DNA from: Selaginella moellendorffii
Lineage: Eukaryota > Plantae > Lycopodiophyta
Length of the DNA: 64,000 bases
Reading direction: 5' to 3'
NCBI RefSeq assembly: GCF_000143415.4
Contig: NW_003314273.1
Span: 1,518,052 to 1,582,051, forward strand
Part shown: positions 18,705 through 55,403 of the stretch, one piece after another
How positions within the stretch are numbered: position 1 is the stretch's first letter
Layout: every line of letters starts with the position of its first letter
Notes under the pieces: model-generated
Database searches by the model: none
The model's input: only the letters and a program-made list of their open reading frames with translations
Told to the model about the DNA's origin: nothing
Translations under genes and position numbers: made by a program

Positions 18705-18804
18705 NNNNNNNNNNNNNNNNNNNNNNNNNNNNNNNNNNNNNNNNNNNNNNNNNNNNNNNNNNNNNNNNNNNNNNNNNNNNNNNNNNNNNNNNNNNNNNNN
18801 NNNN
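18705..18804. other. Assembly gap (100 N)
   Basis: Run of N. Confidence 1.
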
Positions 18805-34800: not shown

Positions 34801-36699
34801 GATACATTTATTACGTGTCATAATTTTTCTAGGCATGCACAAGTAAGAAAATTGGGCACTTATAACTCTTGTCTTTGAGTCCAATTTAAAAATAACTAAA
34901 GCCAACCTTAGTGAAGAACAAATTGGGGAATTATTGACCCAAATCTTACGAAGCTTTAACAAGGCAGCTTTTTATCCAAGGTCCTTTACCTTGGACAATT
35001 ACTCAAACATGGTTTGAGAGTAGACTTGTCTTAAGTTTAAGTCTTCTATGCATATTGCAAGAGCCTATGAAACTCAAATAAAACTCATAAGTCAAAAATT
35101 TGAATATGGTTATCACGAACCGTTATAATTATTCAAACCACTCTACATTTAGTACACCTAGGCAAAGTAACCAAGGCTCATCTCTTATACATAGAAAGTT
35201 TGCAAACACTACTTAGTGTGAAAGATGTCACTCTCCTATATATTGTGAGAGCACTCACATCACATTTAGCTCTATAGAGAGGAATCAAGGGCAATCATGT
35301 GAAACACACCCCATATCCTCTGAAGTAAGGCATAGATAAAAAGTAAATATACAAGTGAATAGGCATGAAAATCTGTCTTTCAAACTAATTGAGCGATGCT
35401 CAATTACTAAGGGAAATACTCACCACTTTAGGTGTGAAATACCCTTTGCAAGACATGAACCACCCTTTATAAGATGTGATCCACAAGTGTATATACCTCC
35501 TCATAGGAGAGAATTACCACTTAATGAATATTTTCCACATAAGCAAAATTATACAATTACTCTAGTAAGAGTTATAGCTTAATTTCCACCTATATTTGAA
35601 ACACACAAATCACCTTATGTGCTAATCAAGCTTTTGCCAAACAAAGTAGTTGAGAGGCTTCATGTCATAAATGTTGAACAAAGAGTTGTAGAGCTTGTTG
35701 CTAGGTGTAGGTGTCAGTCTTGGAGACACTACAACCATTTTTTTGATCTCTAGAGAACTAAAGCAAACTTAGAGATAAAAAGGGTTTTGTTTAAAAAGGT
35801 GAAACAAGCCTTAGACACTCTAAGAAATTCTGAAATGCATTGTAAAGCTAAAAAAAAATTGTCACATAAACTTGAGTAAAGATTTGTATTGATTATAACC
35901 ACTTGTTGGCAAAAAAGTTAAAGAGAAATTTGCCTTAAAAAGCAATTTTTATTTAGATCTAAAGCAAAGTCTTTCATAAATTAGGTATGATATGTTTAAA
36001 AAACAACTTAACATCATTTCACAAAAAAATTGATCTAGAATAGGCTATCATGTGCTAGACAATTTGACTCTTATGTTGATTTCACAGAGCAGTTTCATGG
36101 AATAGTCTTCACGCCCCATCCAAATTAGTCCGTAGTGTTGATTCATTTAAAAGAGGTTTGCCCAAAATTTGCCAAGAGCAATAGGCCACTTTTTCTAATT
36201 TCACAGTTGTAAGGGCAAAGTTAGCTATCAACTTGAGGGTAAGACCCACTGTGAAGTAGGCAAGCTACTCTAGAATTAATTATTAAGTGCTAAAAGCTTT
36301 GCATTGAATTAATCTTAACAACACTAAACATGGGTAAAAGGAAAGATCCTCTTGTGCACTTAGGTGAAGAGATTGAGGATTCCTGACCCTCCACAGTCTT
36401 AATAGAAGTTCATTGGGGGAGTTAAGGTAGACAAAATAAGAATTTTTACCAGTGATCTATCATACATATTAGAAGATATATTTTACTTATAAACCCATAT
36501 AGAAGTTAGTTAATCCCCATTCTATGTGACTAGGTAAAAGTATAAGAAAACAAAAACTAAATTATCTTGTGTCTCTAACTAGGCTAGCAAATGATAGATT
36601 TAATGAAATTAATTAAATAGATAGACAAATTACCGAGTGGAATACTTTATAATATTCTGCTCAAGATATACAAAAGTCTTACTCCTGGTACCTTTACTA

Positions 36700-39600
36700 T
36701 TGTCAAAGAAGGTTTGATAATACATATAGATTACTTTGTAAGTACATAGTGTAAGCAAGACTTATATATGTGGAATTATCTCTATAAAAAGAAAATAGTA
36801 CCTAGATTCTTCTTATACAGAGAAATAGTTTGCCTATCTAAGCTAAACATAAATCTTAAGTATTATAACTTATAAAGGATTTATAAAATTCTGCCTACTA
36901 GAAAATTGCTAAAACTTTATGCAATCATAAGCAAAGAAGCTATTATGGGAACTTTAACGGTTCACAATAAAGTTATAGGCAGAAATACATTTGCTGATAA
37001 TTGGGCTAATAGATGTTGGATAAATTCCAAATTTAGATTGATATGCAACAAAATTTTATGGAGTAAAAATTTCTTAAAATGAACTACATCTCAATGATAT
37101 TGATATGCTGTGAAAAACAACATTTGTTACTCGAGAAATTTATGCGACTTTTATATAAAAAATATCCTAGATATTTGGCCTCTAGAGGAAAGCTATACCC
37201 ATTTTGAAATTGATTGGGAAGTTAAGTGCTTGCTCCTAAGAGTGACTAATAGGCTAATTTACAAGGGGAATACATTAAATAACAAAACCTTGTACCATTT
37301 TATAAATGAGGTATAATAGCTAGGTGTGCCATAATATCAATGCCAACAAACCTCAAAATATATAAATATAGACTAACAATTGATTTTACCTATAAAGGTT
37401 TAGAGGGCATAGTCCCTATGTATAAAATTGTCACTGTTTATACCAAACAAAGTAATAAATATATAACATTTCCCTCACAATTTGATGAGCAAAAGGCAGT
37501 TTGAAAATAAGTATTCACAAGATCTAAAATGAGATTACAGAGCACTTACTCGTGATATTCACGATCTTAACCTCCCTATACAACAATTTAAATCATTACT
37601 CAATCAAGCTAAAGAAAAGTTTAAAAGAGAGAAAATTGAAAGCATATTAGATACACTTCAAGGAAGAGGAAATCAAAAATCTTAATACAACTTTAATAGT
37701 CATTCAAAATACATGAATCCATACACTACTCCTCTTTTGCAGCATCGACATATAAAAAACACCTCTACTTTTGCTAAGGGTAGTGGAATACAAAACAACT
37801 AGAGTGACTCCCTATAATAGGAAGAAGACCTAAATTTACAGCTCTTACCCTCTAACTATGATCCAGGTTCCCTTACGAACCAAACATCTATTTTGCATAT
37901 AGTAGTTGCAACATAGAGTATTTTCTGTCAAATTGCAATAAGTACAATGACAATTGTAAGAACGGCAATATATATCATCACATATACATCTTTTTCTGGA
38001 ATTAAAGGAAAGGACCCATAACTGCATAAGGAGCAATATACAGAAGCAATTAAACTTAATCAAGTAGATGGGCATGAAAAGAATCTTTTCTCCTATATGC
38101 TCAAAAACAAAGCAAAAAACTAGTACTATGATAATGATGTCAAAAAGTTCAGTATATTTGATGAACAAATAAAGGTTTTTTTTAAAGCTTTCTCCATAAA
38201 AACAAACCTAGGAGAAATCTATGATGAGTTACAAAAGTTTCATCAAGGAAAATCTGAGACAATTGAGGAATATACAACTCGATTCAACAAGCATTATAAA
38301 CATTGTAAAGACTTAGTGTTAGACAAAATGTGCCTACACCTACATATACATGACCTCAAGAAAATTTATCATGAATATGCGATAAAGAGAGCTCATATAA
38401 ATTTTGATGACTTAAAAAAGTTATGATTGCCTACTAAGATCTCATAAATCAATATGACATAGAAGATATGGTGAAATAAGACTAAAAGATGACTCTTATA
38501 GACAAGGAAACTAATTATATAAGAAGCTTCAAATTACAAGCCAATCTCAAACAAGAGATTTGGTGTACCAAATGCAAAAATGAAGGCCATAGCAAGGAAA
38601 AATGCAAACCTTAATTAATCAAGTGTCAATTTTGTGAAAAAGAGGGGCATTTAGGTAAAGAGTGCAGAACCTTGTTTAAACAACTAGGAGGTTAACAAAT
38701 AGCCCAAGTTAATAAAACAACACATAAGCAAAATTATCCATTTGATAATAGAAGTTATCGTTCGAGGAATGATTACAATATGCCAAATGTGAATACCCAC
38801 ATACTAAAAGGTAAGATGACCATTGGGATTATCCACTATGGGTAATTTTTGAGATTATCCACCTAACCATGAGGACTGTAGGCCTAGAGACTATAATCAA
38901 CCTAGAGAATATGATTAGCATAGAGGCTATAATAGGCTTAGATATTATAAAATGCCAAAAAAGTATAATTAAGCAAAGACTTTTATTCGCTATCTTAGGT
39001 TATACAATTAAGTTAAATCATCAAGCAAAAATGATAAGCCTTCTATGGTTACACAACCTGCAACTAAGCACATTGAGATTGACCTTAATTTATGATTGGG
39101 AAGAAGGCTTAGATGATTTCCAAGAACAATCAATCTTAGAAACTTTTCCTAAAATTGAGTCAATTTTAAAAGTTGATCTTTATTCAATACTCAAAGAAAT
39201 ACTTAAGCAAGAACCCCTAGACCAAAGATCAATACAGCCATAAAAGATTTCTCCTTAAAAAAGGATTTTGCTTATAAAATTGATCAATAAAGAAACTATG
39301 TTTTACATGTTTCTTATGATCAACCACTTAAGTAAATCAAATTTAGTAAATGAGGATAATCTGCATGCTGTTACAAATGCTCAAAGATTGCAAATTAAAT
39401 TTCACAATCAAACCATATATTTACTAAAATATTACAAGGATATTTTTGCCTGGTTTTACACAGATTTAAAAGGCATCCCGCCAGAACTCTATATGCATCA
39501 TATTGAGATATACTTGGAAAATATGTCTAAAATGTAGATGCTCTTAAAATGAATTCTAATTTACTAAGGTAAAGTCAAGGAGGAAATTGATAAACTTCTC

Positions 39601-42038
39601 TACATAAAATTCATTTATCCAATCCAAAATGCTCAAAACTTTCACCACTTCTAATTGTGTCTAAGAAATATAGCAATTTACAAGTTTGTGTAAATTATGA
39701 AAAGCTAAATGATGCAACAAAAAAAGATATGTTTTCTATTCCTTTCATAAATGAAATTCTGGATTTAGTAGTAGATCATGAAATGTATTCATTTTTTTAA
39801 TAGATTTTTGGGTTATATCCAATTCAAAGTAGCACTTGAAAATCAACACAAAACAACTTTTATAAGCCCATGAAGAATTTATGTCTATTGCAAAATACCT
39901 TTTGGTTTATGTAATGATCTTTTTATATTTCAAAGAGTTATTGTAAACACTTTTAAAGAATATTTCATTGATTTTATAAGAGTTTTCATAGATGATTTTA
40001 GTGTCTTCAACTCCAAAAAGGAACATTTAATATGCTTGCAAAAATATTTCCAAAAATATAGAGAATATAGCATTTCTTTTAATCTAGAGAAATGTAATTT
40101 TTTTGTAAATTCAAGCACACTTTTAGGTCATATTATATGCAAAAAAACATCCTTGTAAACAAAGATAAAATTCAAAAGATTGAGACAATGTTTTTACCAC
40201 ACAATTTAAAAAGTCTCTGTTTCTTTCTAAGTAAAGTTCGCTACCATAGGCAATTTATGAAAGCTTATATAAAGATTGTTAAGCCACTTACTGATCTTTT
40301 AAAAAAAAATACTCCATTTATATGGAATTTGTTTTGTTAAAAAGCAGTTTTAAGGCTTAAATAATGCATCAAAAAGACACTTATACTTATTAAGCCCAAA
40401 TGAACAAAAGAGTTTCACCTATAAGTGGATATTTTTGATATTGCTATAGATACAATATTGTTCCAGACACAAAGTGATTAAAAGGATCATGCTATCTACT
40501 ATGCTAGTAGACGTTTAAATCCTATTGAACATAATTACATAATGACTGAAAAAGAAGCCTTAAACATAATTTAAGCTTTACAAAAATGTAGACATTATCT
40601 TTTGGCAATAAAAGTAATTGTCTTTGTTGACTATAAGGCTCTTTTATAAGCCATATATATCTACTCGACTAACTAAATGATTTTTACTACTACAAAAATA
40701 TAACCTTAAAATAGTATAAAGATTTGAAAAATTCCATAAACAGGCCGATTGCCTAATCCGCATCACTACAAGAGAGTCACCTAATACTAAGGTAGAAAAA
40801 CTCCTATTTGTTCATTATTTGTAATTTTTATGCCTACCACTTGGTTAAAAGATATACAAATCTATTTTTGTATAGGCACTGTTCCACCCCATTATAACTC
40901 GCCAAAGAAAAAGAAATCATTTGTCTTGTAGACACAACTTTGCTCTGTCGTGGGGGAGCACTTATATAAATTAGGCATCGATAGAACACTAAGAAGATGT
41001 GTTAATAGGCAAGAAGAAAAAAATAAAATTCTAAAGGAAGCTCACTTATCCCCATTATAAAATCACAGTTAAAAAAGTCTTACAAGCAACGCTATGGTGG
41101 CCTATGCTTTGAAAAGATATAGCAATTTTATGTAAAAATTGTAATATTTACTAAAGGCATAAACTACCACCTAAAACAAAATCCATGAATGAAATCCTAA
41201 CTATTCATATGAAGCATTTCATAAATGGGGATTGGATTTTATGGGTCTTATGGTGACAAGAAGTAAGAGGAACAAATACATTTTAGTCGCCACTAATTAT
41301 GTGACTAAATGGGTAGAAGCTATACCTATAAAATAAACCTCAACCACTAACATTGCCAAATTCCTTTATGAAAACATCATTGTAAGATTTAGTTTGCATA
41401 AGGAGATCGTCACAGATAGAGACACCCATTTCATCAATGAAATAATAGAAATTCTTGTACAAAAATTCATTCTTAATCACAAAAAGTTTATGCCATATTA
41501 CCCACAAGGGAATAGTCAGGCTGAATCAACTAGCAAAGTGCTTAAAAACATCTTGAAAAAGATTGTAAAGGACAATTAAAAAGACTTTGATAAGGAAATC
41601 CTAGATGCTTTATGGGTTTATAGGACTACGTATAAAGTATTCATATGCATGACACCATCTCGTCTTACTTATGGCCAGGAAACTTTAATGCTTATGGAAT
41701 TTATAATTCCCTCTTTGCATATTGCAATTAAAAATGGCTTAGATGAAAAAGAAGCTCTTAAGTAAAAACTTGCCAAAATAGAAAACTTAAACAAGCTTAA
41801 GCTTAGAGCAATCTAGACCCTACACACAATTCAAAAAGCCAAAAATGCTAAACATGATAGACAATTGAAAATCATTTATAAGTTTAAGCCAAGAGATAAA
41901 ATCCTTTGGTATCAAAGCAAAATAGATATTCTTATAAACAAATTCAAGAGAAAATGAAATGCTCTCTAATTATTTTGTTTAAAATATTAACTCTAGGAAT
42001 GGATGAAGTGCATAACTTAAACGGGGATGATACTACAA
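36700..42038 (+). mobile_element. Heavily decayed, AT-rich Ty3/Gypsy element D (gag, RT, RH, IN remnants), related to element B; resumes at 54432
   Basis: WCTKCKNEGH knuckle near 38561; YKDIFAW...KGIPPE; FIDDFS; integrase WGLDF and YPQGNSQAE motifs. The left boundary is approximate. Confidence 0.8.
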
Positions 42039-42062
42039 AAGCTCTATTTCGTTAAAGTGGGA
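42039..42062 (+). repeat. Left terminal inverted repeat
   Basis: Exact reverse complement of 54408-54431. Confidence 0.95.
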
Positions 42063-43667
42063 TTTATTCAGTAAAATGGGACTAGGTACAAATTTTCAAG
42101 TATTTGAAAATGACGTGAAATTATATGTTTTTTGTCCAGGGGCTAGACATATCTGGGGCATGGTGACTAGCGCGGTGACTTTATGTCCAGACTGTGTCCA
42201 TCTGGTTGTATAATAAATCTCATTGTCAAGGTGAACAAGCCGAATCTGAAGCTAAAGAAGAGCGATGGCATGCGCGCACACACTATTTGTTTGTTCATTG
42301 AGCGTGTGGTGAGCTTTCCAAGATGAACGTCATTCCTATTAGCCAGACATATAACTTAATGGTGAGAACATTTAGATATTATTCAATGTTATCTTTTTCT
42401 AACGAATCTAATTGTGAAGGTGTAGCAAGAGGCATTGCTAGTCTGGAGAAGTCATTTAACTCATTTGACCCTTAGTGTATTTTCATGAAACTAAATAACA
42501 TTCATATTATTAAGGAATTTCTCTAGTACCTTTTTTTTACGACATAGAGGCTTGCATTTCTTTCAAAGGTGATTTAGTAAAAGGCCTGAGGGCACATGCC
42601 ATTCTATTTCTCAGACCGGTATTAAGATATACTAGTGCAAAGGGAAAAAGGTATTTGGTGATCAAGTAAATGGCATGAGGGCACACGCCATTATAAGCCT
42701 AAGCGCTAGTGGACACCTCCTTTTTGGTACTCTCAGTGGTACTATCATCCTTCTCCGGGTCAGTTGTTTTGCTTTGGATTGTTGTCTCTGATGTTACTGG
42801 GGCGTTCTCGATAGTTGTTAATGTTGCCGTTTGTTCAGAAAAATGATCACCTGGAGTATAGTACGGGGAGTTTGGAAGACTTATATATTCTACATCTTCA
42901 CCTATCTCCTTCTTCGTCTCCTTTTCTGCCTCACTTACAGATTTTGTGCTTGCCATGAGAACACTCTTCACCCTAAAATATGGAGTTCGTTGTGTTATAA
43001 AAGGAAACCAACACACACACTGCAAGGGAATGATGGTACATAAAGCACGTAAGCCCACAATATGGGTTTATGTGCCATTAATATGGGCCACATGCCATAT
43101 TATTAGATTTATGCACGTGTGATTGGTAAATGCATATGTCACATCATCTTTGTTTTACCTCACACACTATATCAGGCCTAATGAACCATATCACATGTGC
43201 GCACATGCTATATATATGGAGAAGTATTATGCAAGGATAGAAATTCAATGCATGATTGTGGAGAGCAATGGCATGAAGCCACATGCTAAATAACATTTTA
43301 GAGAAAGAATTAAAATAAAAACATGCAAACAGTACTAAGTGGACCAAGACTTAGAAGTGCACAATTGAATGAGGTATTTCTAATAAATACTTCACTCACC
43401 TCATATAGGAATGGCTACCACTCTCAAATGGCGTATCACCTCATGCCATCACCTCGCAATTTGTTATAACAATCCGATGAATTCATATTCGGCTTGTTCA
43501 CCTTGAACTTTAAGTAAGATTTGCTAGAACAACTAAGAATTTATACTTGTTATTTGTATCATCTCACCTAGGAATGGCGTAAGGCCACATGCCATCACGC
43601 CTCCTCTGATTTAGATTCGGATTGTTCACCTTGAAATAAAATACATTAGAAACTTAATAAAGGAATA

Positions 43668-46493
43668 TTAATGAATCTCACTTTGAACCCGGGTTATGAA
43701 TGCTCTTGCTGCATCTCTTGCATGGTCTGGCAAGGTGATGGTGGCACTCTGCTTCCGCATCCAACCATGCACAACATTATCCACCGATATGCTCATGCTG
43801 GGATCCCTTGGATTCAACACCCATCTCTTTTCTAGGCAATCCTTCGTATATTCGGAACTTGGCTTGAACCACTCCACAGTTACATTGAAGGAGTTAGTTT
43901 CCGCGTCCTCCTCTGCATCAGTGATGCAGCGCCCCACCTATATCATTTGTTTTTTATTACTGGGTCTGACAAGCACGACCATTCCTTTGCAGACCTGTAC
44001 TGGATTGAATGCTGAATCCGGCTTCTTGTTCCTCGGCCCACAATAGTGATCCTCAACATCGTTATCTGTCACTGCATTTCCAGAGGACATTGTTCCGCTA
44101 CTATCTGGTGCTCTGGGTTCTGGCCAAAAGGACTCTTCCAATTCTTCATATACAACCGGCCCATTTTGGATAGCAGATATAATCTTCTCCCAGTATTCGA
44201 GCAAAGGCTTGCACCTCTGAAAATAGGATTCTCCACCAAACACCAACCCCCTCTTCCAGAAGGCAATATGCTGTCTAATCCCGGCCACTATACTTTCCTG
44301 GTCTTTGAGTCCATCCGGGTGCATCGGCTGTGGGGAACCCTGAGGAATCATAGGTTCCCCAGTTATGGGATCTCTCTTGAAGAGTTCAATGCCGTCCACT
44401 GGCAGCCACACTGTGTCCCATTCTCTCATCTTGTACCTCATCACTGGAGCACCGTCACACATGCTGAAATGAAACTGAAGAGGCTTGGAGTGGCCAATCA
44501 GCGTTTCGAATCCGTCCCTGATGTAGCCTCTTACAAACCCCTTAAAGTTTGGAACCTCTGTAAGAAGTGCAGCTTCAACAGTGCCTTTGATGCAATTTTG
44601 GAATTCATCGTAGAGTTGTGGGAGGGTGAGGACATTGGATCACCGGAGGGACTCTGCCAGGTGACTGAACATGGCATCGACGTCTTCATGAGTGTGCCCA
44701 ACCATGAGAAAGCCAAGTGTAACCGTTTCAAATATGCCTTTGGCAACAAGCATCGCCAAGTACGCGAAGACGTACATGTTTTTGTTCTCACTGCCAGCAT
44801 TGTCTGTTTGGAGCAGAAGATGGGGTGGAAGGCCACATCGGCCGCAAGAACTTCCTTGAGATTCTGCTTCGTTTGGATGAGGCTGTGCATTCACCGGGCG
44901 ACCACCCTCGTCGGAATGGTATGAGGCCTCACGTGATAACCCTACAATCTGACGGCCAACATATTCACTGGGATGGCATGGGGCCCCACGCGATACTGCA
45001 AGCCTTTGCTCCTCCTCCAGCTGAACCCTGTATGGGGTTCGATCGACAAGGGCCTTATGCAAGGGTTCGCCGTTTAGCTCAGTCTGCGCACTTTGTAGAG
45101 ACCTTAAGTGTTTTGCTAGGGACGCAATCATCATGTTTGCACCCCCGCCACCCCATAGAGGTACAAAGAAGTTCCCATAGTTCTGGGCACCATGCCCATG
45201 AGCGATTATGCCAAACAGAGACACAGGCAGCTGCATGGATGAAGAGATTGCCTTGGGGGCAGGATTGAGTCGAGGTAAGCACGTCTTTTTCTGGTCCATT
45301 TTGTCGTGGATGATGCAGAGGTAAGAGTCAGGTCTCTCCATGGAGAGAATCCTGTTATGATAATATGCAGTCCTGCAACTTCTCTGCTCGATGTTGTGGT
45401 CGAGCCGCCTTCTAACCAACGTCTCTCGCTCTTGAGCGCTGCAAGAATTCTTCGACAAAGCCATTTTGATAGCAGTGCACTCGTCACACTTTGAAAAGCT
45501 GGAGTACTTTCCTATACTCACATCCCTGAACCTGTTGCTCCACAATCTACTAAATCTAGATTGGCTCAGCTTCCTGTAGCCATTACTCTGGAGTTCCCGA
45601 TTCACATCTTCCAATATGGCCCCCTTGGTATACATGGAAGGGAGAACTTGTTGGGTGTCTCGTGTTCCATCTTCCAAGAGGCGGGTTTTATGTGGTTGCT
45701 GCTCGCTACATGTCTCGATAAACCTCTTGAAGATTGCCTCTCTATATACAACATGACCCCTGGTTTTGTGCGTACCGTCGTTCCCATGGACTGCCTGTTG
45801 AACCCTTTGTTCCTCGAACTCAGTTTTGATTCTGTAGAATGTGGTTCGAGGGACTCCATAAATGATTCTCCATGCCTTCATGCAGACCAAACCCCTCTGG
45901 AAGACCATGCCCCCCACCTGATGTTCTGAAGCATCAACAGATGACCGTAATGCCTTATACATAAAATTGCGAGCTGCCATCCAGGACAATATCTTGTATC
46001 TTGCTCTCTCCTCTTCAATAGCATCCCAATCAGCATGCTGACAACACCTCCTCTTGCAACAAGCAACTGTCGAGACCATTCGAACCTCCATCGCCATTTT
46101 CTGCCTTTTCGGTTCGTTGCTCAGATCCTTTTGGCTGCGCTTTAGGAAGGTGTACTTTCTTTTCCCATGAAGAGATGTTCTGTCATCAGTTGTAGTGGTG
46201 TTTGATTGTGAATCCTTCACATTCTCAAACACTAAGTGCCTCAATTTCCACCGCACAATGCTTCCAATAATCAGACTATTTTCTTCTGTGTCAACAACCT
46301 CTAAAATCGCAACTCCAATATCATCCCAGCCCAATTCTTGATTAACAACCACATCTCTTGGATCGACAACTGTGGCTAAGCCCTCAGCTACCACCTCCCC
46401 CTCGGGGTTGTTTAGAAACACCTTCGCCTGAATCCATGTAGCACGGTTCTTAAGATCCACGGAGGGAACATGCATCGCACTTGCGGAGGCCAT
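43668..46493 (-). pseudogene. DDD-type transposase (~941 aa, Sola1-like motifs) with two in-frame stops
   Basis: ORFs 44640-46493, 43938-44462 and 43668-43937 are in one frame, separated only by TGA (44640-42) and TAG (43938-40). Motifs: FSKCDEC, IIHDKMDQKK, LQTDNAGSENKN, FLMVGHTHEDVDAMFS. A splice acceptor (TTTCAG) lies just before the ATG. Confidence 0.85.
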
Positions 46494-48398
46494 TCTGAAA
46501 GTGCAGAAAAGAAGTTAAGACCATACAAAAAATGATTGGAGAATGGCCTAAATCATAACATACCAAACAACCTCAATAGCATGAGGCCACATGCCATTAT
46601 TCAAACATGCTATTGACACCCATGTGAAATTTCGCATTCACAAAATTGGCATGAGGCCTCATGCCATCTTGATAAACACATAGCTACAAGTAGGTAAAGA
46701 AACTATTGGCAATATGCTAGTGATGAACTTGCAAGCCCCAAGATGGCATGAGCCCTCATACCATTAGTGGTACCGTAGCGCCACTCGCACCACCGCAACT
46801 GCTCGTAGCACCGCTCGCACAAACTGCCACTCGCATAAACTGTCGCTCGCAATGGCCCTCGCAATGCCGCAATCGCTCGTAGACGCATAAACCACAGCCC
46901 ACAACGCCGCTTACACAAGCAGCGCTCACTGCGCTCAGCGGAACCAAGAACACGGCGCACAAAAATGATAGACCTAGGAATGAGTTCGAGAATTCAAAAA
47001 TAACACACGCTTGAACGTCACATCAAATCCTCTGACAAACCAGATCTTATGATTCCTCTGACAAATTTCAAACTGAGTAGCGTCTAGACTTTGCTGTCGG
47101 AGGTTGAACTTTGTCACATCATGTCCTTGCCTCGATCCAGCTGTGCCATGTCAGTGATTCGAACTTTGCCATGCCATGTCAGCGATCCGCGCCAAGATTA
47201 TTCGCCGTGTAAAGGAATAATTATGCTGTGTGTGTACGTCCATTTATGGCAATATAAGGCCACACGCCATTTAAAGAATAATGCTAGTCGAACATTTTTT
47301 GGTGCATTTTTGGGTTTAAAATTGCATGAGCCCACACGCTATAAAGTTTACCTATACCAAAAATAGAAACAGCTTTATTTACTTGGGAATTTAAGTGGTT
47401 GAGGCATTTTTAAACTTACAAACACATGCCCTACTTACATTCCTTTGGTTGCTTAAAATTCAAAAATATTATAAACCTTTCTTTTTACATTTTGAATGTT
47501 TTCAATTATGGTTTTTGATTTTCGCAGGACCAGCCTAGTAACACGCCATTCAAGGAATAATGCCACAGGACGCCTGGATTTTTGGGTTTAAAATGTTTAG
47601 GGTTTTTTGGGTTTTTTCAAAATATTTTGGGTCCAACGTTTTTTGGGTTTCTTTGGTTCAAAATTGCATGAGCCCACACGCTATAATATTGATTTGAGAG
47701 AAAAATAGAAACAGATAGAATTTCTTTATTTAGCTGAACATCTGCCATTTTTGGAAATACAAGATGCTTTGGAATATCCAATCATGCATGGTATAAATAT
47801 AGTGAGGGTATTAAATGATATCCCAATCATGATCTTTCTTTTGGATTTCGCGTGCATGCAGTCCGAGGAATGATGACATTGCGGATTTCTTTTGGATTTT
47901 GCGTGCTTGCATGCGCGCGGCAATCCAGAAATTAATGGTGGCGCCCAAGTCTGAGGAATGATGACGTGGCGGGATTACCAACCGTTGTGACATTTCGCGC
48001 GTGTGAGGTTAGGTTTTGCATTTTGCTTCATACTCGCGCTCGCGCTCGCATCACACTCGCGCTCCCGCTCGCATCGCGCTCCCACTCGCGATCACACTCA
48101 CTTCTCTACAGGTTTCTCGTGTGCATCGGCGTCCACTCGCGCTTGCATCACACTCGCGCTCGCATCGCGCTCGTGTGCATCGGCGTCCACTTCAAGACAC
48201 ACCCAGTTTGTAACTTCGCCGCCAACTCCGCCGCCCACTCCGCCACCCACACGCAGCCCACTTGGCGTCCCGGGAGATTTCAGCACCACTCTCCAACTGT
48301 AAGTGGCAGAGTAGCCTTGCTGCTACGATCTGCTGCACATACAGTGCACATTCACCAGCGAGTCTGGCCTCGATTGTCACGCCTCCATTCGGCTTCAA
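46494..48398. promoter_or_regulatory. Putative bidirectional promoter/5' UTR region of the transposon, with two CpG-dense blocks
   Basis: Lies between the two divergent start codons; CTCGCG/CTCGCA-rich blocks at ~46775-46960 and ~47995-48270 flank an AT-rich core with duplicated segments. Confidence 0.55.
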
Positions 48399-51300
48399 AT
48401 GGTAAGTCTTTTAGGCCAAGTAGAAAATGGCATGAGGCCACATGCCATTCAGTAGCAACATTGGCATGCACTGATTGGGCTCTCGAGTGCAGTCCGGTTA
48501 CAGATGGCGTGTAGCCTCACGCCATCTTAGGATGCAGCCTCAAGACATCTGATGCAGTGGTGAATGGCGTGTGGCCTCACGTTATTTCCAGCTGCTAGTT
48601 TTTCATCTGTCAGCTCTAATTGTTGTGCATTTCTGAACAGGCGAGGAATTGCGTTCTTCTTCCAGCCACTGTCAATGTGGATGCAGAGAAGGGGGAGGAG
48701 CTCACCAGTTGGACTTTCGGGATGGAAGGCGAGGATCTGATGTTGTGCAACACAGATGGTGGGAGAAAAGAATGCATGGGGATCCTCATCCAAGTGACAG
48801 ACACTCCATGCAGTTCCATGCAAGAATATGGACTGGCACTTGTGGTAAAGACAGCGTCCGCCTTCAAGATCCACCTTGCACATCCTAGTGGCTTCCCGGA
48901 GGGGGGCAGCGGCTATGAGGAATTCCTAGAGGGAGCTAGGGAGAGGTTGTCCAGGAGGCCCACAATTTCAAAGACGCTGCGGGTCTATGAAGATCACATG
49001 GAATCCACGGACCTCACCTACGGCGATGTTCAAAAACTATATTCCAACATTGAGCCGTTGAGAGTGCCTCCAGTTCGCGAAGCGAAGGGGAAGGGGGTCG
49101 ATCTGGAAACTACCCCGAAGCAGAAAAGGGTGGTCAAGCTCAAGCCGACGTCCGACTCTGCTGCTCCAAAAAAGAAGCTACTCGGTGATGCCATTGCCTC
49201 AGGTTCGAACACTACACCCACCAAAAAGAAGAGCCGCAAAGAGCAGAAAGAGCAAGAAGAGGCAGCAAAAATCGTCGCAGATAATAGTACTTGTTACTAT
49301 TCCAACAAAGTATATACAATTGACGTGAGCCGTATCGACATCCAAAGCAAATACAACCACAGGCTAGTATCTGATGAGTGGGTGGAGAAACTGAAGCAGA
49401 AGATGCTGGCAAGTCCAGTAACACCCGACATCGCAGACGTGATCCCCTACTACCGAACAATGAAGGGCGAGACGAGGTTTCCAGACTTGATCAATAGGAA
49501 GGTGTTGGACGATCAGAACATCCGGTTCTATGCCGTCTCCGGGCAGCATTCTAGCTTGGCGATGCAACAGATAGTTGTGGATATTATGGTGGGCGAGGAG
49601 GTGAAGAAAGTCTTCAAGACAAGAGTTGTCCGCCTGATAAAAGGCAACTCGCCCCTCCAATCTATCATATACATCTCCCACGCGCAGAATGTCAAGCAAG
49701 AAACGTGCTACAAATCGGGTCTGCACGAGACATTGGCACGAACACGGAAGCTCTAGGTTCAACTGAAGAAGCCACAAAAACCAGGACAAGGACGTGCACT
49801 AGCAACTAGCGCCTGGCAGGTAAGCCTCGTTGCATGTGGCATAGCATGTGGCCTCACGCCATTTCCATTGCAGGAATTCTCGAGTCTTCTCTCGAAAACA
49901 CTGGGGGTCAATGACACACTCAGCATCCATAACATTCTACTCGCGACAAAAGTTGTTTTTGACAAATGGGTAGATGTGCTGAGGAGGTACCATGACGGGG
50001 AGTTGCTAAACTCAATGGGTGTGGAGGACGGCCGGAAGCCCAATGATTTGAAGCTCAATGCTTTGTGTTTCTCACGGTCTCTAAGCGACGACGACCTTCT
50101 GACAGTGGCTAATGCTCTTCTACGTGGTGAGGTAGTCTTCAACAAGACCAAAATGACTCCCGGCCATATTGTGACATACGAGGACTTGTGCACGACTCTG
50201 AGAGCTCGTGCGCTATTGAAGGATTGGATCTTCGAGCAAGTGGCCGTGGAGAGGGTGAGCATCGACACCACGCAAGAGATGATGGAAGAGCTGGAGTTGT
50301 CAAATGAAGACATCGACGAGTACGTGAAGGGGGCCCCCAAGTTCATTAATCTGCTGCGGGATGCCACGAAAAGTAAAGCTGAGAAGTTGGATCAGTATCC
50401 AAATTTCATTAAGAGGGATGTCGACCGCCGGCTTCAGAAACAGCTCGACCCCGCAGCAGAGGCCTATCGAGAACCTTACCGGGTATACGTGAATTCGGAT
50501 GAGGATCATAGGTGGAGGAGCATCGTTTCCCGCGGAGATGAGCAGGTCAAGAACATCTTTTGTGTGATGGACTTCACAAACGAGGAGATCACTCATGCAG
50601 ACGAAGTCAGCTCCATCATTGACTTAATGGTGGGACTTGCGGAGGTGGAATCTTCAGTCCACTATATGATCTACGACTCCGAATCCTATCACAAGTTCTG
50701 GAAGGCCTTGAACGAGGTGAAGGCTCGGTTAAAAGGCAAGGAGATGCGGGAGATCCATGGGATAATGGCTAAGAAGAAGATACCGACGAATGTCCACATC
50801 TTCACACTCGCCCTTGTTATTGGTCCTGCAGCAGAGTGGGACTGGAGTGACTTCCCAGCTTCGTTCAACAAGGCCGATCGAATTGATCTGAGGGAGGTCA
50901 ATTTACCTGTGCCTGAGGAACTGAAGACGGCTATGGAGCTTTCGAATCCAAAGAAAGCTCCAGGTGCAGCATGGGAAATGCTCAGCTGGGTCTTCAACGC
51001 AATAGCGAGTGACTCCAAGGGCAAATGCGTTGTCGAGTACAACTGCGGCGGACTATTCTTTCGAGCCGCACTACTCAAGGGTGTCCCGTGTGTTGCGGTG
51101 ACAAACTCCATTGAAGAGGTGACTTCAATGGAGCATATAATTATAGTTGCCAAAGAAAAACAGTATCTTCTCTGCGAACCTGGTGAGTACGCACTTTAAG
51201 TTTAAATGTTATCTCACAAGCTCTGTATGCAGGAGCATGGCCACCCCCAGATGCTGAAACGGCGTTAACAGCTACTGATGTTAGGCCGAGCTCACAACCT

Positions 51301-53989
51301 GCAATAGGTAAGGTCACGTGAGGCCTCACGCCATTTTGATTATAGATCGTTGTGAATATTCAGACACGAGGACTGAAAAGCACACTGGTGGCACGTCGAA
51401 GAAGGACAAACAGACAAGCAATAGGAAAAAAGGAGGTACAAATTATATTTGCAATGGCGTGTGGTCTCATGCCATTCCTTGCAGGAGACACTTCTTCAAA
51501 GGCAAAACAGGCAAGCACCAGCCAAGCTCAAACTGACAGTGGTCATAAAAAGCGAAAGCACGTTGGACAGTCGTCGGGATCAGAGGCGTTTGATTCGAAA
51601 AGGAAGAAGGGCAACGAAAAGATGATAGGTAATGCCTCGCGGTTATGGCGTGTGTGCTCATGCCATTCATTGCAGATCAAGGGCTGAGTGAAAGGAGCCA
51701 GTCACCACCTCCTGACTCAGATTCCTATGGCAGACTCCCCTTCCCCAATCTCAATGGAGAGGTACAATGGATGAGGGATGCTTTTCAAGTCAGGGCCACG
51801 TTTTTCTCATCTCGTCGTCTTCGAAGGGTGCAAGAACGTGCAGAAACCATGTTAAGACAGTCGGGTGAGGATACGGTCCTAGGTCAAGCACTAAAACAGG
51901 CTATGGATGTCTTGTATTTTGAGATGGAGACTCGGCCAGATGATTTTCCCAAGATGGTCCTGGAAGAACAAGCCATCCAGCCTGAGCAGCCTATGGAAGA
52001 AATACAGGAGGGGGATGAGGAGCCAGAGAAAGATAATGAGTAGGAAGAGCAGAAGGACGAAGAGGAGGACAAAGAAGAGGAGGACGAAGAAGAGGACGAA
52101 GAGGACTTGGATGGTCCTCACAATGGTGACGATCACAATAACGACGACGACGATGATGACGACGATGGCCAGCCTGAGGTGGCCAAAGAGCAGCGGAGGA
52201 AGGTCATACAAGACAAACCATCAGGTAAATAATAGTACATCCATTCCTAACCTTTTACCATTTCTAACATTGTCCATGTAGGTCGCAGAGCAAATGGTAA
52301 GTAGAGATTATTCAGTTGAATTAAGATACAAACTCTAGCCTTTAGTGTCGAGGAAGGATAGTGCCAAGCAAGGGTCGAAACGTATGTCCAATCTTTCAGA
52401 ATCAGCAGTGCGCCCAAGTGATATCGGTCCTAGTTCCTCAATAGCAGTTGATGGTAAATACAGTATAGTCGATTCAATGTGCTAATGAGTTTGTTTTTAA
52501 TAGCCAGTAGGGAGGATACCATCTCAATCGAAGGGAGATATTTGGACATGCATATGGATCCGCCAGTGGACTCTACTTGCCTGCAAGAGTCATCAGAGCT
52601 GGTGGAGGTTACTATCCATATCAACGCCAAGCAAGCTGACCACGCTCCACTTGATGCTGCCCATACCACTGACTCAATCTTGTCCACGTATCCAACTGAC
52701 GGTGACCAGGCGCCATTGGACCCGCATGAGGCCGCCCCAGCCGCCGAGCCGGTCGTATCCTCATTTCCAACGTGTGCCCAATCGTTTGACTACGCGCCGT
52801 TGGAACCTCCCTACACCGCCCCTGCTGCCTGTTCGGTCATGTCCACTTTGCCAACGGAGGCACCAACTGAAATGGCGTGTGATCACACGCCATCGGAACC
52901 ACCCCATGCCACTGTTGAGCCAGTTGTACCAGAGTCTACAGCTGAAATGGCATGTGCCCACACGCCATCGGATGCGATTGACCCCACATTGTAGAGGAGA
53001 GTATTTCCGCCCTTCACGTTTCCTCGACCAAAACCCTCTCAACGACCATCGGGAGCACCATTCGCTAATATTGTAGATGGTAAAATTGACTTGTACTATT
53101 TTTTATGCTGACGCATTTCATTTCAGAGTCACGGCGAAGGTACTATATCGTTTTTGATCTGAACGGTGTCCTTTTCTCCCATGAGCGTGGCTCGTCCTCG
53201 AATGTCACTGCACCCTCCAAAGCCTGCGGTCGCAAGTTGGTCAAAAGAGACAGATTCACATTAATCACACGGGAGAAACTGCGGGATCTAATAATGACCA
53301 TGCGACACTTAAAACAGAGGGCCGGGTTCAATTTGCAATTGGGAGTTTGGACATCCATGATGCGCCACAATGCATTAACGTTGCTACAGATGATGCACGA
53401 TCAGACGCGAGTAATATTACCATTTGACTTTCTCCTAACGCAGGAGGATTGCTTGACTATGGTCCATGTGAGGGGTAGCAAGCCCATCTTCGTCAAGCCA
53501 GAGGCTGTAGTGATGAACCGGATTGTTAGGTCAAGTGAAATCCTCATCATCGATGACTCGTCGATTAAAACTGCAGCGAACACGCACACATATGCAGTGC
53601 ACCCCATCTCTTGCAGTATGGAAACTAGGGAGAAGAAACCGTATGTTCTGGGGGACCTTGCAAAACGGCTTGGAGCGATGGTGATAGAGAACTGGCCAGT
53701 CCAGGAGGTGGCTGCAGAAATCAACCAAATGGCAGATGGAACGGTATATCAGAAGCCATTTGATCGGACAGACACCAGTCATCATTTATGGCATGTATAT
53801 TGTCTAGCCAAGCACTATCCGCATCTCCATAATCTACTCAACTGAATGGGTTCTTCGACCACTGAACATGAGCGTGGACGTATTAGAGAAGAGATGGCAT
53901 TACTATTGGGTTTAAATCCTGATAGTGTGGAGAGTGATGAAATTCCAAGATTATTGTATAGGCGTTGGAGGCAAAAAATAACAGTCTGA
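48399..53989 (+). pseudogene. 11-exon transposon cargo gene (~1600 aa): ParB/Srx-like domain, degenerate amino-MTase-like fold, basic/acidic low-complexity linker, FCP1/NIF-type HAD phosphatase
   Basis: Exons 48399-401, 48641-49819, 49874-51182, 51233-307, 51364-435, 51485-628, 51676-52224, 52282-296, 52346-453, 52504-53079, 53127-53845 (probably to 53989). All introns are GT-AG and the frame is kept. Stops at 49754, 52041, 52992, 53843. Motifs: FYAVSGQHSSLA; VVEYNCGG...AALLKG; IVFDLNGVL, GVWTS, IIDDS. Confidence 0.75.
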
Positions 53990-54407
53990 GATGGCATGTA
54001 TTTATTTAAAAATGTAACTTATTATGGCATGGGGTTCCATGCCATTGTATTAATATTAAAAGACAATTCTTTGAGAGGATTTGCATTATACTAGAAGTGT
54101 TACAGCATGTTATTGGAAGTCTATGAAGTTGTTTTATTAATAAGGGGAAAGTAAAGATTGAATGGGGATTTGGGCTCCACCTAGACTCGGAACAACTGAG
54201 CCAATATTAAAAGGATGGAAAGAAATTGGACGACGATGACAAGGAGAAGAGAGAGGTGAAGCAGTGGCAGAGGGAGGAGAAGTGATTGAGTAGACATTTC
54301 CTTGTTTAAAATAAAATGGCATGTGCCTCAATGCAGTTGAATTTTGTTATATTTATATACTATATAAAGGTTTGGAAACCTTATTTTACAAGTGGGATAA
54401 TGACAAT

Positions 54408-54431
54408 TCCCACTTTAACGAAATAGAGCTT
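54408..54431 (-). repeat. Right terminal inverted repeat
   Basis: TCCCACTTTAACGAAATAGAGCTT. Confidence 0.95.
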
Positions 54432-55403
54432 ACAATAGTAAATTTAAATTGTTTAAGAAAGTACCATGAAGATATAAGCATAAATATTTTTTATATCTTA
54501 GGGTGCAAAAATATGGATAATCTCATAAATAAAGCCCTCGCAAGGATTTATCGTTAAAGAGGGCCTTTTATTTTCCAGCAAAACACCAAAAGATTGGGTG
54601 TAGTTTTATTAGACACAAAACTAGCAAAGAGCCTTTATCTAGAGGGGCCTACTATGGAAGTTCCTATGGAGAGGGGGCTTGCTTGTGAATTGGATCCCGA
54701 AGGTTTGCCTAGATGTGTCACCTAGAACCATTCATCTAGTGGTGTCCACATCCATTCTCGAGTACCTACATTCTCTTGCTTCCATAAGAAATGCCAGATC
54801 TGTGCTTCTTTCTTAGCTTTTTCTGGACTATTTTGCCCTCCTCTCTTTTCCAGTTGTAGAACATGGGCTGCTGTTGTAGTAATCATTCTGGTCCACACCC
54901 GTGACACCACCATCTTCGATCCTTCATGTTTGTAGCGCATGTGGTTTTGACCCTTTATCCTATGGTGATTTACCATAGGATAACACCACGAAGCGGAACC
55001 TAAACCCTCTTTGTGCCACGTGACAGATGCCACGTGTCACATGCCACGTGTCCATAGGAACCCAAGGTTTAGGGCCTTGGGCCACTGAACGAAGGAACAG
55101 TGCCAAACTCCCAAGCGTGAAGCCAAAGAGTGGTGGAACTGAACCACGGAGCAACTCCTGAGCATATAGCCCAAGGAGCGAAGGAACAAGAGCCTGGAGC
55201 GACTTGGAACAGTCCTGGAGCAACTAGCATCCCAATGCCAGGACCAACACACAAAATGGAGCCAAACGGAGTCTGGCGCTATTTCAGCATATCGGTGGCC
55301 TAACGCGAGGATATGGGTACTCCACAAGCTAGCATGGTGTGGAACTTGGGCTTAGACCCAAGCCGGACGCATAACAAGGACAAGCACGCAAGCGGGAGCT
55401 AGA

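What the first reader, a model, noticed from the sequence alone, without database searches (positions are those of the whole stretch)
42265..54337. About 25 copies of a 22-bp palindrome (consensus ATGGCATGAGGCCTCATGCCAT) spread over the whole element
The arms ATGGCRTG/CAYGCCAT sit at a fixed 6-nt spacing, and the spacer is semi-conserved (WGGCCW). Copies occur near both ends, in UTRs, in introns and in coding sequence (44916 and 44973 in the transposase; 52872 and 52947 in the cargo gene). Flanks differ between copies, so this is not tandem duplication or a MITE; fixed length and dyad symmetry suggest a site for a dimeric protein. By eye I found none in the ~51 kb outside the TIRs. Unlike typical transposase subterminal repeats, they cover the interior and do not resemble the TIR.
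Basis: seen in the sequence. Interest (0 to 1): 0.88.

Follow-up and report, generated by a model that had tools for sequence, protein, structure and literature searches.

The report
Transposon-wide palindromic protein-binding sites
A 12.4-kb eukaryotic DNA transposon carries about 25 copies of its own 24-bp palindrome in its ends, leaders, introns and disordered coding linkers; they are most likely docking sites for a protein the transposon encodes, which resembles motif arrays known from plant transposons but occurs here in an unstudied transposase family.

Summary
A motif scan finds 25-26 sites scoring 13-38 bits, all inside the element (42039-54431). The best score in the other 51.6 kb is 1.8 bits. 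The unit is a 24-bp dyad, A-ATGGCRTG-WGGCCW-CAYGCCAT-T, and its flanks carry no information.

The element has 27-nt inverted ends and a 4-bp ACAA target duplication. It holds a DDE-type transposase gene (Pfam DUF7869) and a 1,574-codon orphan cargo gene; both are broken by in-frame stops.

The R/Y positions are two CpGs that decay independently, with no pairing covariation. That argues against a hairpin and for double-stranded half-sites.

Distant relatives of the transposase carry their own, different multi-copy palindromes of 18-32 bp. This holds for 11 of 48 short loci and 0 of 144 shuffles. The palindrome is therefore a lineage-specific cognate site, most likely for the transposase's N-terminal zinc/helix-turn-helix-like module. 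Binding was not shown.

Four of nine cargo-gene coding-sequence (CDS) introns contain a copy, placed so that its CTCAY sits where the branch point lies in the ordinary introns.

The closest analogues are the Spm TnpA and VANDAL VANC motif arrays. I rate this a new variant of a known kind, of moderate interest.

The parts
42039..54431 (.). Whole transposon (12,393 bp)
   Evidence: Bounded by the inverted repeats. The left end is confirmed by a second, internally deleted copy, L001, which stops at the same terminus.
42035..42038 (.). Putative target-site duplication ACAA, left
   Evidence: Read from sequence. The same 4 nt abut the right end.
54432..54435 (.). Putative target-site duplication ACAA, right
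   Evidence: Read from sequence.
42039..42065 (+). Left terminal inverted repeat, 27 nt, with no palindrome motif
   Evidence: pair I2, 96% complementary.
54405..54431 (-). Right terminal inverted repeat
   Evidence: pair I2.
43668..46493 (-). Transposase gene (Pfam DUF7869). One reading frame, broken by in-frame TGA at 44640-44642 and TAG at 43938-43940.
   Evidence: Pfam E=9e-30. A single tblastn segment against full-length homologues covers 46490-43704. P0160 has R where the TGA stands.
45753..46166 (-). Candidate DNA-binding module of the transposase: basic tail, CC-x3-CC plus Cys cluster, helix-turn-helix-like end
   Evidence: Alignment A3. AF2 model pLDDT 85.6. Weak HTH_29 hit in P0003. 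No significant PDB fold match.
48680..53845 (+). Cargo gene. The spliced model has 1,574 codons, 9 CDS introns of 38-57 nt, in-frame TAG stops at 49754, 52041 and 52992, and a C-terminal NIF/FCP1-like domain at 53105-53845.
   Evidence: Spliced translation. Pfam NIF E=7.7e-5. No homologues found for the first two long ORFs, and none of its ORFs matches a related locus.
42265..42286 (.). Palindrome copy, left subterminal region
   Evidence: 24.5 bits.
42581..42602 (.). Palindrome copy, left subterminal region
   Evidence: 28.4 bits.
42670..42691 (.). Palindrome copy, left subterminal region
   Evidence: 37.2 bits.
43088..43099 (+). Orphan half-site
   Evidence: 17.5 bits on the half-site matrix.
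43190..43211 (.). Palindrome copy, left subterminal region
   Evidence: 23.1 bits.
43268..43289 (.). Palindrome copy, left subterminal region
   Evidence: 26.6 bits.
43428..43449 (.). Palindrome copy downstream of the transposase stop, about 40 nt from a copy of the second motif
43574..43595 (.). Palindrome copy downstream of the transposase stop, about 20 nt from a copy of the second motif
44916..44937 (.). Palindrome copy inside the transposase ORF (variable linker between catalytic motifs)
   Evidence: Also present in L001.
44973..44994 (.). Palindrome copy inside the transposase ORF (variable linker)
   Evidence: Also present in L001.
46576..46597 (.). Palindrome copy, transposase 5' leader or upstream intron
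46646..46667 (.). Palindrome copy, transposase 5' leader or upstream intron
46743..46764 (.). Palindrome copy, transposase 5' region
47249..47272 (.). Weak copy: intact right half, decayed left half
   Evidence: 13.2 bits; half-site 18.9 bits.
47321..47342 (.). Palindrome copy in the divergent intergenic region, within a 342-bp direct repeat
   Evidence: family D6.
47663..47684 (.). Palindrome copy, second unit of the 342-bp repeat
   Evidence: family D6.
48427..48448 (.). Palindrome copy in the cargo-gene leader (putative 5' intron, 4 nt before an AG)
48504..48525 (.). Palindrome copy in the cargo-gene leader (putative 5' intron)
48564..48585 (.). Palindrome copy in the cargo-gene leader (putative 5' intron)
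49841..49862 (.). Palindrome copy in CDS intron 49820-49873
51313..51334 (.). Palindrome copy filling most of the 38-nt CDS intron 51308-51345
51454..51475 (.). Palindrome copy in CDS intron 51436-51484
51645..51666 (.). Palindrome copy in CDS intron 51629-51675
52872..52893 (.). Palindrome copy translated as MACDHTP, in a 75-bp in-frame repeat of the cargo gene
   Evidence: (family D7).
52947..52968 (.). Palindrome copy translated as MACAHTP, second repeat unit
54024..54045 (.). Palindrome copy, right subterminal region
54316..54337 (.). Degenerate palindrome copy, right subterminal region
   Evidence: 18.0 bits.
42227..42245 (+). Second left-arm motif CAAGGTGAACAANCCGAAT. Further copies lie at 43487-43505 (-) and 43615-43633 (-).
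   Evidence: 3 exact or near-exact copies inside, against 0.04 expected.

Best explanation
The palindromes are the cognate double-stranded DNA binding sites of a sequence-specific protein encoded by the transposon. That protein binds as a dimer or other two-fold symmetric unit.

The most likely binder is the transposase itself, through its N-terminal basic / Cys-cluster / helix-turn-helix-like module. Recognition of the unrelated 27-nt terminal repeats would be a separate function.

The likely unmutated site is ATGGCGTG-WGGCCW-CACGCCAT, with one CpG per half-site. The R/Y variation seen today is CpG-to-TpG/CpA decay in an old, methylated, dead copy.

I infer the following roles; none is shown:
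- Arrays near both ends help assemble the transposition complex.
- Copies in the divergent promoter and leader region and in the interior keep the protein concentrated along the whole 12-kb element for self-activation or anti-silencing, as described for TnpA and VANC. The CpGs would make occupancy sensitive to methylation.
- Interior copies survive only where sequence is free to vary: introns, disordered linkers and untranslated regions.
- In introns they are kept in the orientation and position where their CTCAY can serve as the branch point.
For: Shown by analysis:
1. The sites are exclusive to the element: 25-26 sites inside, best outside score 1.8 bits.
2. Motif edges are sharp and flanks carry no information.
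3. The two CpG-type positions vary independently (8/8/4/4, p=1). Between two copies of the element, 40 of 50 substitutions are transitions and 15 are CpG-type. CpG observed/expected is 0.41-0.58 in the flanking genome.
4. Relatives with 30-40% identical transposases carry their own multi-copy palindromes of 18-32 bp with unrelated sequences. Examples are 11 copies in L002, 10 in L021 and 7 in L004.
5. Eleven of 48 related loci of 8 kb or less have a palindrome family of 3 or more copies, against 0 of 144 Markov shuffles.
6. The cargo-gene ORFs have no counterpart in any of the 83 loci fetched, and the two long ORFs searched found nothing in the protein database. The transposase is the only protein these palindrome-bearing loci are known to share; most of those contigs are too short to show what else the elements carry.
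7. The transposase has a confidently modelled N-terminal module with conserved cysteines and a helix-turn-helix-like end.
8. Position 14 is T on the sense strand in 6 of 7 intronic copies against 4 of 18 others (p=0.0068). In the four CDS introns the A of CTCAY lies 15-17 nt from the 3' splice site. By my reading of the intron sequences, CTRAY lies 14-18 nt from it in the palindrome-free introns.

From the literature: family-specific motif clusters bound by TE proteins, including intronic ones (PMC5735166; bioRxiv 10.64898/2026.08.24.746577).
Against: - No binding data exist, and the module has no significant structural match (best Foldseek E=1.1), so its DNA-binding role is inferred.
- Only about a quarter of related loci show a repeated palindrome. 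Several (L006, L007, L009, L011) show none upstream, though many contigs are truncated.
- In relatives the palindromes cluster upstream of the transposase gene. Spread through the interior is seen only in this element, which is also the only one with the cargo gene, so the cargo protein could be the binder of the interior copies.
- The orientation and branch-point statistics are post hoc, on small numbers.
Confidence: 0.55

Rival explanations
1. The sites are bound by the 1,574-residue cargo protein, not the transposase. That protein would act as an element-specific regulator or anti-silencing factor in the manner of VANC, which would explain why copies run through the whole element including introns.
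For: The whole-element distribution in non-coding parts matches VANC21 targets (PMC5735166). Interior spread is seen only in the one element that has this gene. The cargo gene carries many sites in its own leader and introns. It ends in an NIF/FCP1-like domain, a fold family that includes RNA polymerase II CTD phosphatases (from my own knowledge).
Against: The first two long cargo ORFs have no recognisable DNA-binding domain and no homologues. Relatives that show no sign of this gene still have palindrome arrays. The internally deleted copy L001, as far as the contig reaches, keeps its sites.
Confidence: 0.17
2. The palindromes act as hairpins in RNA or single-stranded DNA, for example as intron structures aiding splicing, as small-RNA precursors, or as cruciforms used in transposition.
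For: The sequence is a perfect dyad able to form an 8-9 bp stem. Seven copies sit in introns just upstream of the 3' splice site.
Against: The only two variable stem positions do not covary: 8 A/T, 4 G/C, 8 A/C and 4 G/T pairs, exactly the product of the margins. Five of nine CDS introns lack the motif and have ordinary signals. Most copies are outside introns and on either strand. No Rfam family matches.
Confidence: 0.05
3. The sites are host transcription-factor sites that the element has accumulated as enhancers or promoter elements.
For: Several copies lie in the divergent promoter and leader region (46576-48585).
Against: There are none in 51.6 kb of surrounding genome. Relatives carry entirely different palindromes, which fits a co-diversifying element-encoded binder better than a conserved host factor.
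Confidence: 0.08
4. The copies have no function. They would be relics of a small self-copying palindrome or of repeated local duplication and gene conversion inside the element.
For: Some pairs clearly arose by local duplication (families D6 and D7, and the two similar intron ends). The window copy is dead, with five in-frame stops in its two genes.
Against: Most copies have unrelated flanks right up to the motif edge. The sites persist in translated linkers in frame. Intronic copies show a position and orientation bias. Independent lineages maintain analogous arrays.
Confidence: 0.1

Closest known systems
TnpA-binding subterminal motif clusters of En/Spm (CACTA) transposons
   Same: A short, family-specific motif in many copies within the element. 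High local density matters. The motif contains a CpG. It is bound by an element-encoded protein that both helps transposition and activates or demethylates the element. The binding domain is fused to the transposase in fungal and animal elements (bioRxiv 10.64898/2026.08.24.746577).
   Different: Those motifs are asymmetric 10-12-mers confined to the termini. Here the unit is a 24-bp dyad and two thirds of the copies are interior. The transposase matches DUF7869, not the CACTA Pfam families. The termini are not CACTA.
VANC anti-silencing target motifs of VANDAL (Mutator-like) elements in Arabidopsis
   Same: [quoted passage not shown] It differs between related families and co-evolves with the binder (PMC5735166).
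   Different: VANC motifs are 9-mers arrayed in one orientation, often as tandem repeats, and bound by a dedicated accessory protein. Here the units are mostly dispersed palindromes, and no VANC-like protein is detectable.
Operator-type palindromes of dimeric helix-turn-helix regulators
   Same: Two 8-9 bp half-sites in inverted orientation at a fixed centre-to-centre spacing of about 14 bp. The half-sites vary independently.
   Different: This is an architectural analogy only. The fold search gave CRP-family hits at non-significant E-values above 1.
Introner-like elements and MITEs that create introns
   Same: A repeated sequence unit recurs inside very short introns and overlaps a splicing signal.
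   Different: The copies have no terminal repeats or target duplications of their own. They are not found outside this element, most are not in introns, and their flanks are unrelated.

Membership tests
Pfam DUF7869 DDE-type transposase family | Significant match to PF25273 and conserved acidic catalytic motifs | tested here: met
   E=9.2e-30 for the window ORF. The motifs hDKMDQ.KT, LQ.DN and VGHTH.D.DA are invariant or nearly so in alignments A1 and A2. A profile search finds 11,914 cluster representatives at E<=1e-3.
Cut-and-paste TIR DNA transposon | Terminal inverted repeats flanked by a target-site duplication, with a second copy ending at the same terminus | tested here: met
   27-nt TIRs, 96% complementary. 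ACAA on both sides. L001 ends at the same terminus with a different flank.
CACTA/Mirage/Chapaev (CMC) superfamily | Transposase matches Transposase_21 (TNP2-like core) | tested here: not met
   No such hit in the window ORF or in 40 relatives at E<=1. Three of 40 relatives hit Transposase_23 (TNP1), best E=6.4e-7.
CACTA/Mirage/Chapaev (CMC) superfamily | CACTA-type termini and 2-4 bp target duplication | tested here: inconclusive
   The termini read AAGCTCT, not CACTA. The 4-bp duplication is compatible.
Sola, Academ and other superfamilies without older Pfam models | Similarity of the RNase H-like core to the published superfamily profiles | not testable with these tools
   The profiles are not available here. 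PMC5751038 states that these cores lacked Pfam matches. A 4-bp duplication is reported for AcademX (PMC10045372), but no XPG nuclease is present. Foldseek on the full model gave only weak RNase H-like hits (PIWI, Tn5, TnsB).
Transposase- or TnpA-type subterminal repeat arrays | Element-specific short motif in multiple copies | tested here: met
Transposase- or TnpA-type subterminal repeat arrays | Copies confined to the few hundred bp next to each terminus | tested here: not met
   Seven copies lie in the left 1.6 kb and two in the right 0.4 kb, but 16 are interior. In relatives they do cluster in the 1-1.5 kb upstream of the transposase gene.
Transposase- or TnpA-type subterminal repeat arrays | Motif differs between related element lineages | tested here: met
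Transposase- or TnpA-type subterminal repeat arrays | Bound by the element's own protein | not testable with these tools
   Needs EMSA, DAP-seq or ChIP.
VANC-type anti-silencing system | [quoted passage not shown] | tested here: met
   compared with PMC5735166.
VANC-type anti-silencing system | Motifs arrayed in one orientation at high density, often as tandem repeats | tested here: not met
   The units are dispersed dyads, with only three local duplications.
VANC-type anti-silencing system | Element encodes a VANC homologue | tested here: not met
   The first two long cargo ORFs have no Pfam, PDB or database homologues.
Structured RNA or DNA hairpin element | Compensatory variation that preserves the stem | tested here: not met
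   Positions 6 and 17 vary independently, odds ratio 1.0. No Rfam hit.
MITE or introner-like mobile unit | Copies dispersed outside the parent element, with shared ends or target duplications | tested here: not met
   None outside. Flanks carry no information.

The most novel reading that the evidence does not exclude
A very large, unstudied eukaryotic DDE transposase family (DUF7869) may generally use lineage-specific, CpG-containing palindromic operators. The transposase itself would read these as a methylation-sensitive signal along the whole element, combining the TnpA or VANC type of self-activation and anti-silencing with catalysis in one protein. In this element the operators would also have been built into, or have seeded, very short introns by supplying the branch point. 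That would let a transposon plant binding sites inside its own coding region.
Probability: 0.15. Interest if true: 0.75.

Novelty: new variant of a known kind. Interest (0 to 1): 0.55.

Why it matters
Sequence-specific self-recognition by transposon proteins (TnpA, VANC, Mutator transposase) has so far been worked out in a few flowering-plant families. Here the same logic appears in a different and very large transposase family known only as a domain of unknown function. The cis element is unusually clean: a 24-bp dyad, absent from the surrounding DNA, different in each lineage, with a CpG in each half-site. That gives an immediately testable protein-DNA pair. It also gives a way to ask whether methylation-sensitive, element-wide binding is a general transposon strategy. 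The overlap of the site with the intron branch point is a small but concrete example of binding sites and splicing signals sharing sequence.

Tried and rejected
1. I guessed by eye that the first cargo ORF had a ParB/Srx-like domain. Pfam at E<=5 and PDB sequence searches at E<=10 gave nothing, so I dropped it.
2. I considered 30-nt introns around sites 43428 and 43574. tblastn shows the transposase frame ends at 43668, so these sites lie downstream of the stop.
3. I searched for homologues of the cargo ORFs in the 5.8-billion-protein index and in 83 related loci. None were found.
4. I tried to assign a superfamily by structure. The full-length AF2 model (pLDDT 80) gave only weak RNase H-like and beta-barrel reader-like Foldseek hits. 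The model of the DNA-binding-like module (pLDDT 85.6) had no significant hit.
5. Literature searches for DUF7869, DUF8039 and their accession numbers found no papers.
6. I looked for terminal repeats in short related contigs to define complete relatives. None were captured.
7. I compared motif and flank conservation between the window and L001. There were 3 differences in 88 motif bases against 2.8% overall, too few to be informative.
8. The half-site resembles GCCAT-type factor sites. That is from memory only and was not tested, so I did not use it.
9. The source organism could not be identified with the tools. The short introns (38-57 nt) and CTRAY branch points only suggest a small-intron eukaryote.


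Full report
**Observation**

The strict pattern ATGGCRTG-N6-CAYGCCAT has 8 exact matches in the window, against none in 100 dinucleotide-preserving shuffles. Allowing up to 3 mismatches in the 16 arm positions gives 25 sites. All lie between 42265 and 54337, and the only hits elsewhere are four 4-mismatch noise matches.

A symmetrised 24-nt position weight matrix gives 25-26 peaks of 13-38 bits inside 42039-54431, about 2 per kb. The highest score anywhere in the remaining 51.6 kb is 1.8 bits. The matrix was built from these same sites, so only the absence outside is an independent result.

Information content is 1.4-2.0 bits at most arm positions and 0.5-1.6 bits in the spacer. It falls to about 0.1 bit within two bases of each edge.

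**What the element is**

- Two 27-nt inverted repeats (42039-42065 and 54405-54431, 96% complementary) are each flanked by ACAA.
- A Logan contig, L001, carries a 97% identical, internally deleted copy (junction 44604 to 42172). It ends at exactly the same terminus with different flanking DNA. This confirms the left boundary and shows the element was mobile.
- On the minus strand, one reading frame runs from 46493 to 43668 and aligns end to end with about 1,060-residue homologues. It matches Pfam DUF7869 (E=9e-30).
- That frame is broken by a TGA at 44640-44642, which is an arginine in the sister copy P0160, and by a TAG at 43938-43940.
- Alignments show invariant acidic motifs typical of a DDE-type catalytic core.
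- A profile search finds 11,914 cluster representatives at E<=1e-3, including nemertean and sea-urchin proteins.
- An AlphaFold2 model of homologue P0003 (pLDDT 80) shows N-terminal beta-barrels, a helical Cys-rich module ending in a helix-turn-helix-like motif, and an alpha/beta core. The core gives only weak RNase H-like Foldseek hits: PIWI, Tn5 and TnsB.
- No established superfamily could be assigned. CACTA Pfam cores are absent, although 3 of 40 relatives hit the TNP1 family.

On the plus strand, nine GT-AG introns of 38-57 nt join ten exons into a 1,574-codon frame. It has only three internal TAG codons. It ends in a weak NIF/FCP1-like domain. Its first two long ORFs, about 800 residues together, have no detectable relatives. 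Both genes are therefore pseudogenes in this copy.

**Where the palindromes sit**

| Region | Copies |
|---|---|
| 1.6-kb left non-coding arm | 7 |
| Poorly conserved linker of the transposase | 2 |
| Transposase 5' region | 3 |
| Intergenic 342-bp repeat | 2 |
| Cargo-gene leader | 3 |
| Cargo-gene CDS introns (4 of 9 introns) | 4 |
| 75-bp in-frame repeat of a proline-rich cargo segment | 2 |
| Right arm | 2 |

Long conserved coding stretches have none. The terminal repeats contain no copy. A different 19-nt motif occurs three times in the left arm.

**Hairpin or double-stranded site**

The only polymorphic arm positions, 6 (A/G) and 17 (C/T), would pair in a hairpin. Their joint distribution is 8 A/T, 8 A/C, 4 G/T and 4 G/C, exactly the product of the margins (Fisher p=1). 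Pairing is therefore not being preserved.

Both positions are the variable base of a CpG. Between the window and L001, 40 of 50 substitutions are transitions and 15 are CpG to TpG/CpA. The surrounding genome has CpG observed/expected of 0.41-0.58. The simplest reading is an original site ATGGCGTG-WGGCCW-CACGCCAT whose two CpGs decay independently in a methylated, dead copy. This favours a double-stranded site with two equivalent half-sites. No Rfam family matches.

**Relatives**

A scan of metagenome contigs with the transposase alignment returned 80 loci. De novo clustering of short palindromes shows that many carry their own multi-copy dyads with unrelated sequences:

| Locus | Palindrome | Copies |
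|---|---|---|
| L004 | TTTGGCCAT/ATGGCCAAA | 7 |
| L002 | TAACTCGAAC-N3-GTTCGAGTTA | 11 |
| L003, L005 | AGGCTCAAAC-N4-GTTTGAGCCT | 3-4 |
| L010, L014, L016 (variant in L023) | 24-32-bp GAAATCTAGCAC/GTGCTAGATTTC | 4-6 |
| L021 | CCACGGGTG-N2-CACCCGTGG | 10 |
| L032 | TTCCACTCG-N2-CGAGTGGA | 5 |
| L071, L073 | AAAATTAGGCGG/CCACCTAATTTT | 3-4 |

Among 48 loci of 8 kb or less, 11 have a family of at least three copies. None of 144 first-order Markov shuffles does. Most of these dyads also carry a CpG in each half, with TpG/CpA variants.

In relatives the copies cluster in the 1-1.5 kb upstream of the transposase gene. In L021 they lie on both sides of it. Not every relative shows them, and no complete relative was recovered.

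The cargo-gene ORFs have no counterpart in any related locus. The transposase is thus the only protein these palindrome-bearing loci are known to share, although most of those contigs are too short to show what else the elements carry.

**Interpretation**

The palindromes are best explained as lineage-specific cognate binding sites for an element-encoded, two-fold symmetric DNA-binding protein. The most probable binder is the transposase, through its N-terminal basic / Cys-cluster / helix-turn-helix-like module (alignment A3; model pLDDT 85.6). That module has no significant structural neighbour, so its function is inferred, not shown.

The literature gives close functional precedents:
- Spm TnpA binds dense, family-specific CpG-containing motif clusters and activates and demethylates cognate copies. 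The DNA-binding domain is fused to the transposase in fungal and animal elements (bioRxiv 10.64898/2026.08.24.746577).

By analogy, the arrays here would serve end recognition or synapsis plus element-wide self-activation or anti-silencing, with CpG methylation modulating occupancy. These functional steps are inference.

**An extra regularity**

The spacer W positions give many copies an orientation. Seven of eight oriented copies in the minus-gene half read A..A on the plus strand. Five of six in the plus-gene half read T..T (p=0.026). On the sense strand of the local gene, the site therefore tends to read GTG-TGGCCT-CAY.

- Position 14 is T in 6 of 7 intronic copies against 4 of 18 others (p=0.0068).
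- In the four CDS introns the palindrome ends 9-11 nt before the 3' AG, and the A of its CTCAY lies 15-17 nt from the splice site.
- By my reading of the intron sequences, CTAAC, CTAAT, CTGAC or CTCAC lies 14-18 nt from the splice site in the palindrome-free introns.

Intronic copies thus seem to double as the branch point. These statistics are post hoc and the numbers are small. Transcript data are needed.

**Verdict**

The claim that this is unlike known transposon repeats is softened by the VANC and TnpA precedents and by the subterminal-like clustering in relatives. The new points are the dyad architecture, the uncharacterised transposase family, the recurrence of lineage-specific palindromes across that family, and the integration of sites into very short introns. 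I rate it a new variant of a known kind, with interest about 0.55.

Noticed in passing
window 18705-18804: A run of 100 N, presumably an assembly gap.
   Followed up: no
window 9439-13212, 28277-28993, 32838-33620 (minus strand): ORFs with retrotransposon gag, zinc-knuckle and reverse-transcriptase domains. The element sits in a repeat-rich region.
   Followed up: partly
window 36001-42000: A 29-31% GC block directly left of the element, against 40-52% GC inside it. The whole window is CpG-depleted, with observed/expected 0.41-0.58 outside the element.
   Followed up: partly
window 42227-42245 (+), 43487-43505 (-), 43615-43633 (-): A second element-specific 19-nt motif, CAAGGTGAACAANCCGAAT, occurs three times in the left arm only, each within about 20-40 nt of a palindrome. 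It may be a second binding site or part of a longer subterminal repeat unit.
   Followed up: partly
window 48028-48262: Short CTCGCG-type and CCGCC-type tandem repeats in the cargo-gene promoter and leader.
   Followed up: no
window 53105-53845: The NIF/FCP1-like domain reads FDLNGVL where, from my own knowledge, the family has the catalytic DxDx(T/V) motif. The phosphatase may be inactive or divergent.
   Followed up: no
window 49754, 52041, 52992, 43938 (TAG) and 44640 (TGA): All five in-frame stops could have arisen by C-to-T or G-to-A transitions. The TGA is CGA in sister copy P0160. This fits the transition-dominated spectrum between copies.
   Followed up: partly
window 51183-53126: Eight of the nine CDS introns in the cargo-gene model are phase 1, and all are 38-57 nt. 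The 38-nt intron 51308-51345 is almost entirely palindrome.
   Followed up: partly
L016:15050-16799 and L007:5992-6914: This relative lineage has a second, different palindrome of about 44 nt (centre ATCATGAT). It occurs 2-3 times, 2.5-4 kb downstream of the transposase, in addition to the upstream 32-bp palindromes.
   Followed up: no
P0003 residues 13-88 and 125-196 (model): The tandem N-terminal beta-barrels give weak Foldseek matches to Agenet, SAWADEE, Spindlin and KOW-type barrels, which are readers of methylated histones (probabilities 0.3-0.8, TM-scores low). This hints at chromatin reading by the transposase. P0160 has two such barrels, and the window copy lacks the first.
   Followed up: partly
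L001:1-50: The contig starts with a long perfect palindrome, formed by a site-adjacent sequence and its reverse complement. This could be an assembly fold-back at the palindrome or a real rearrangement.
   Followed up: no
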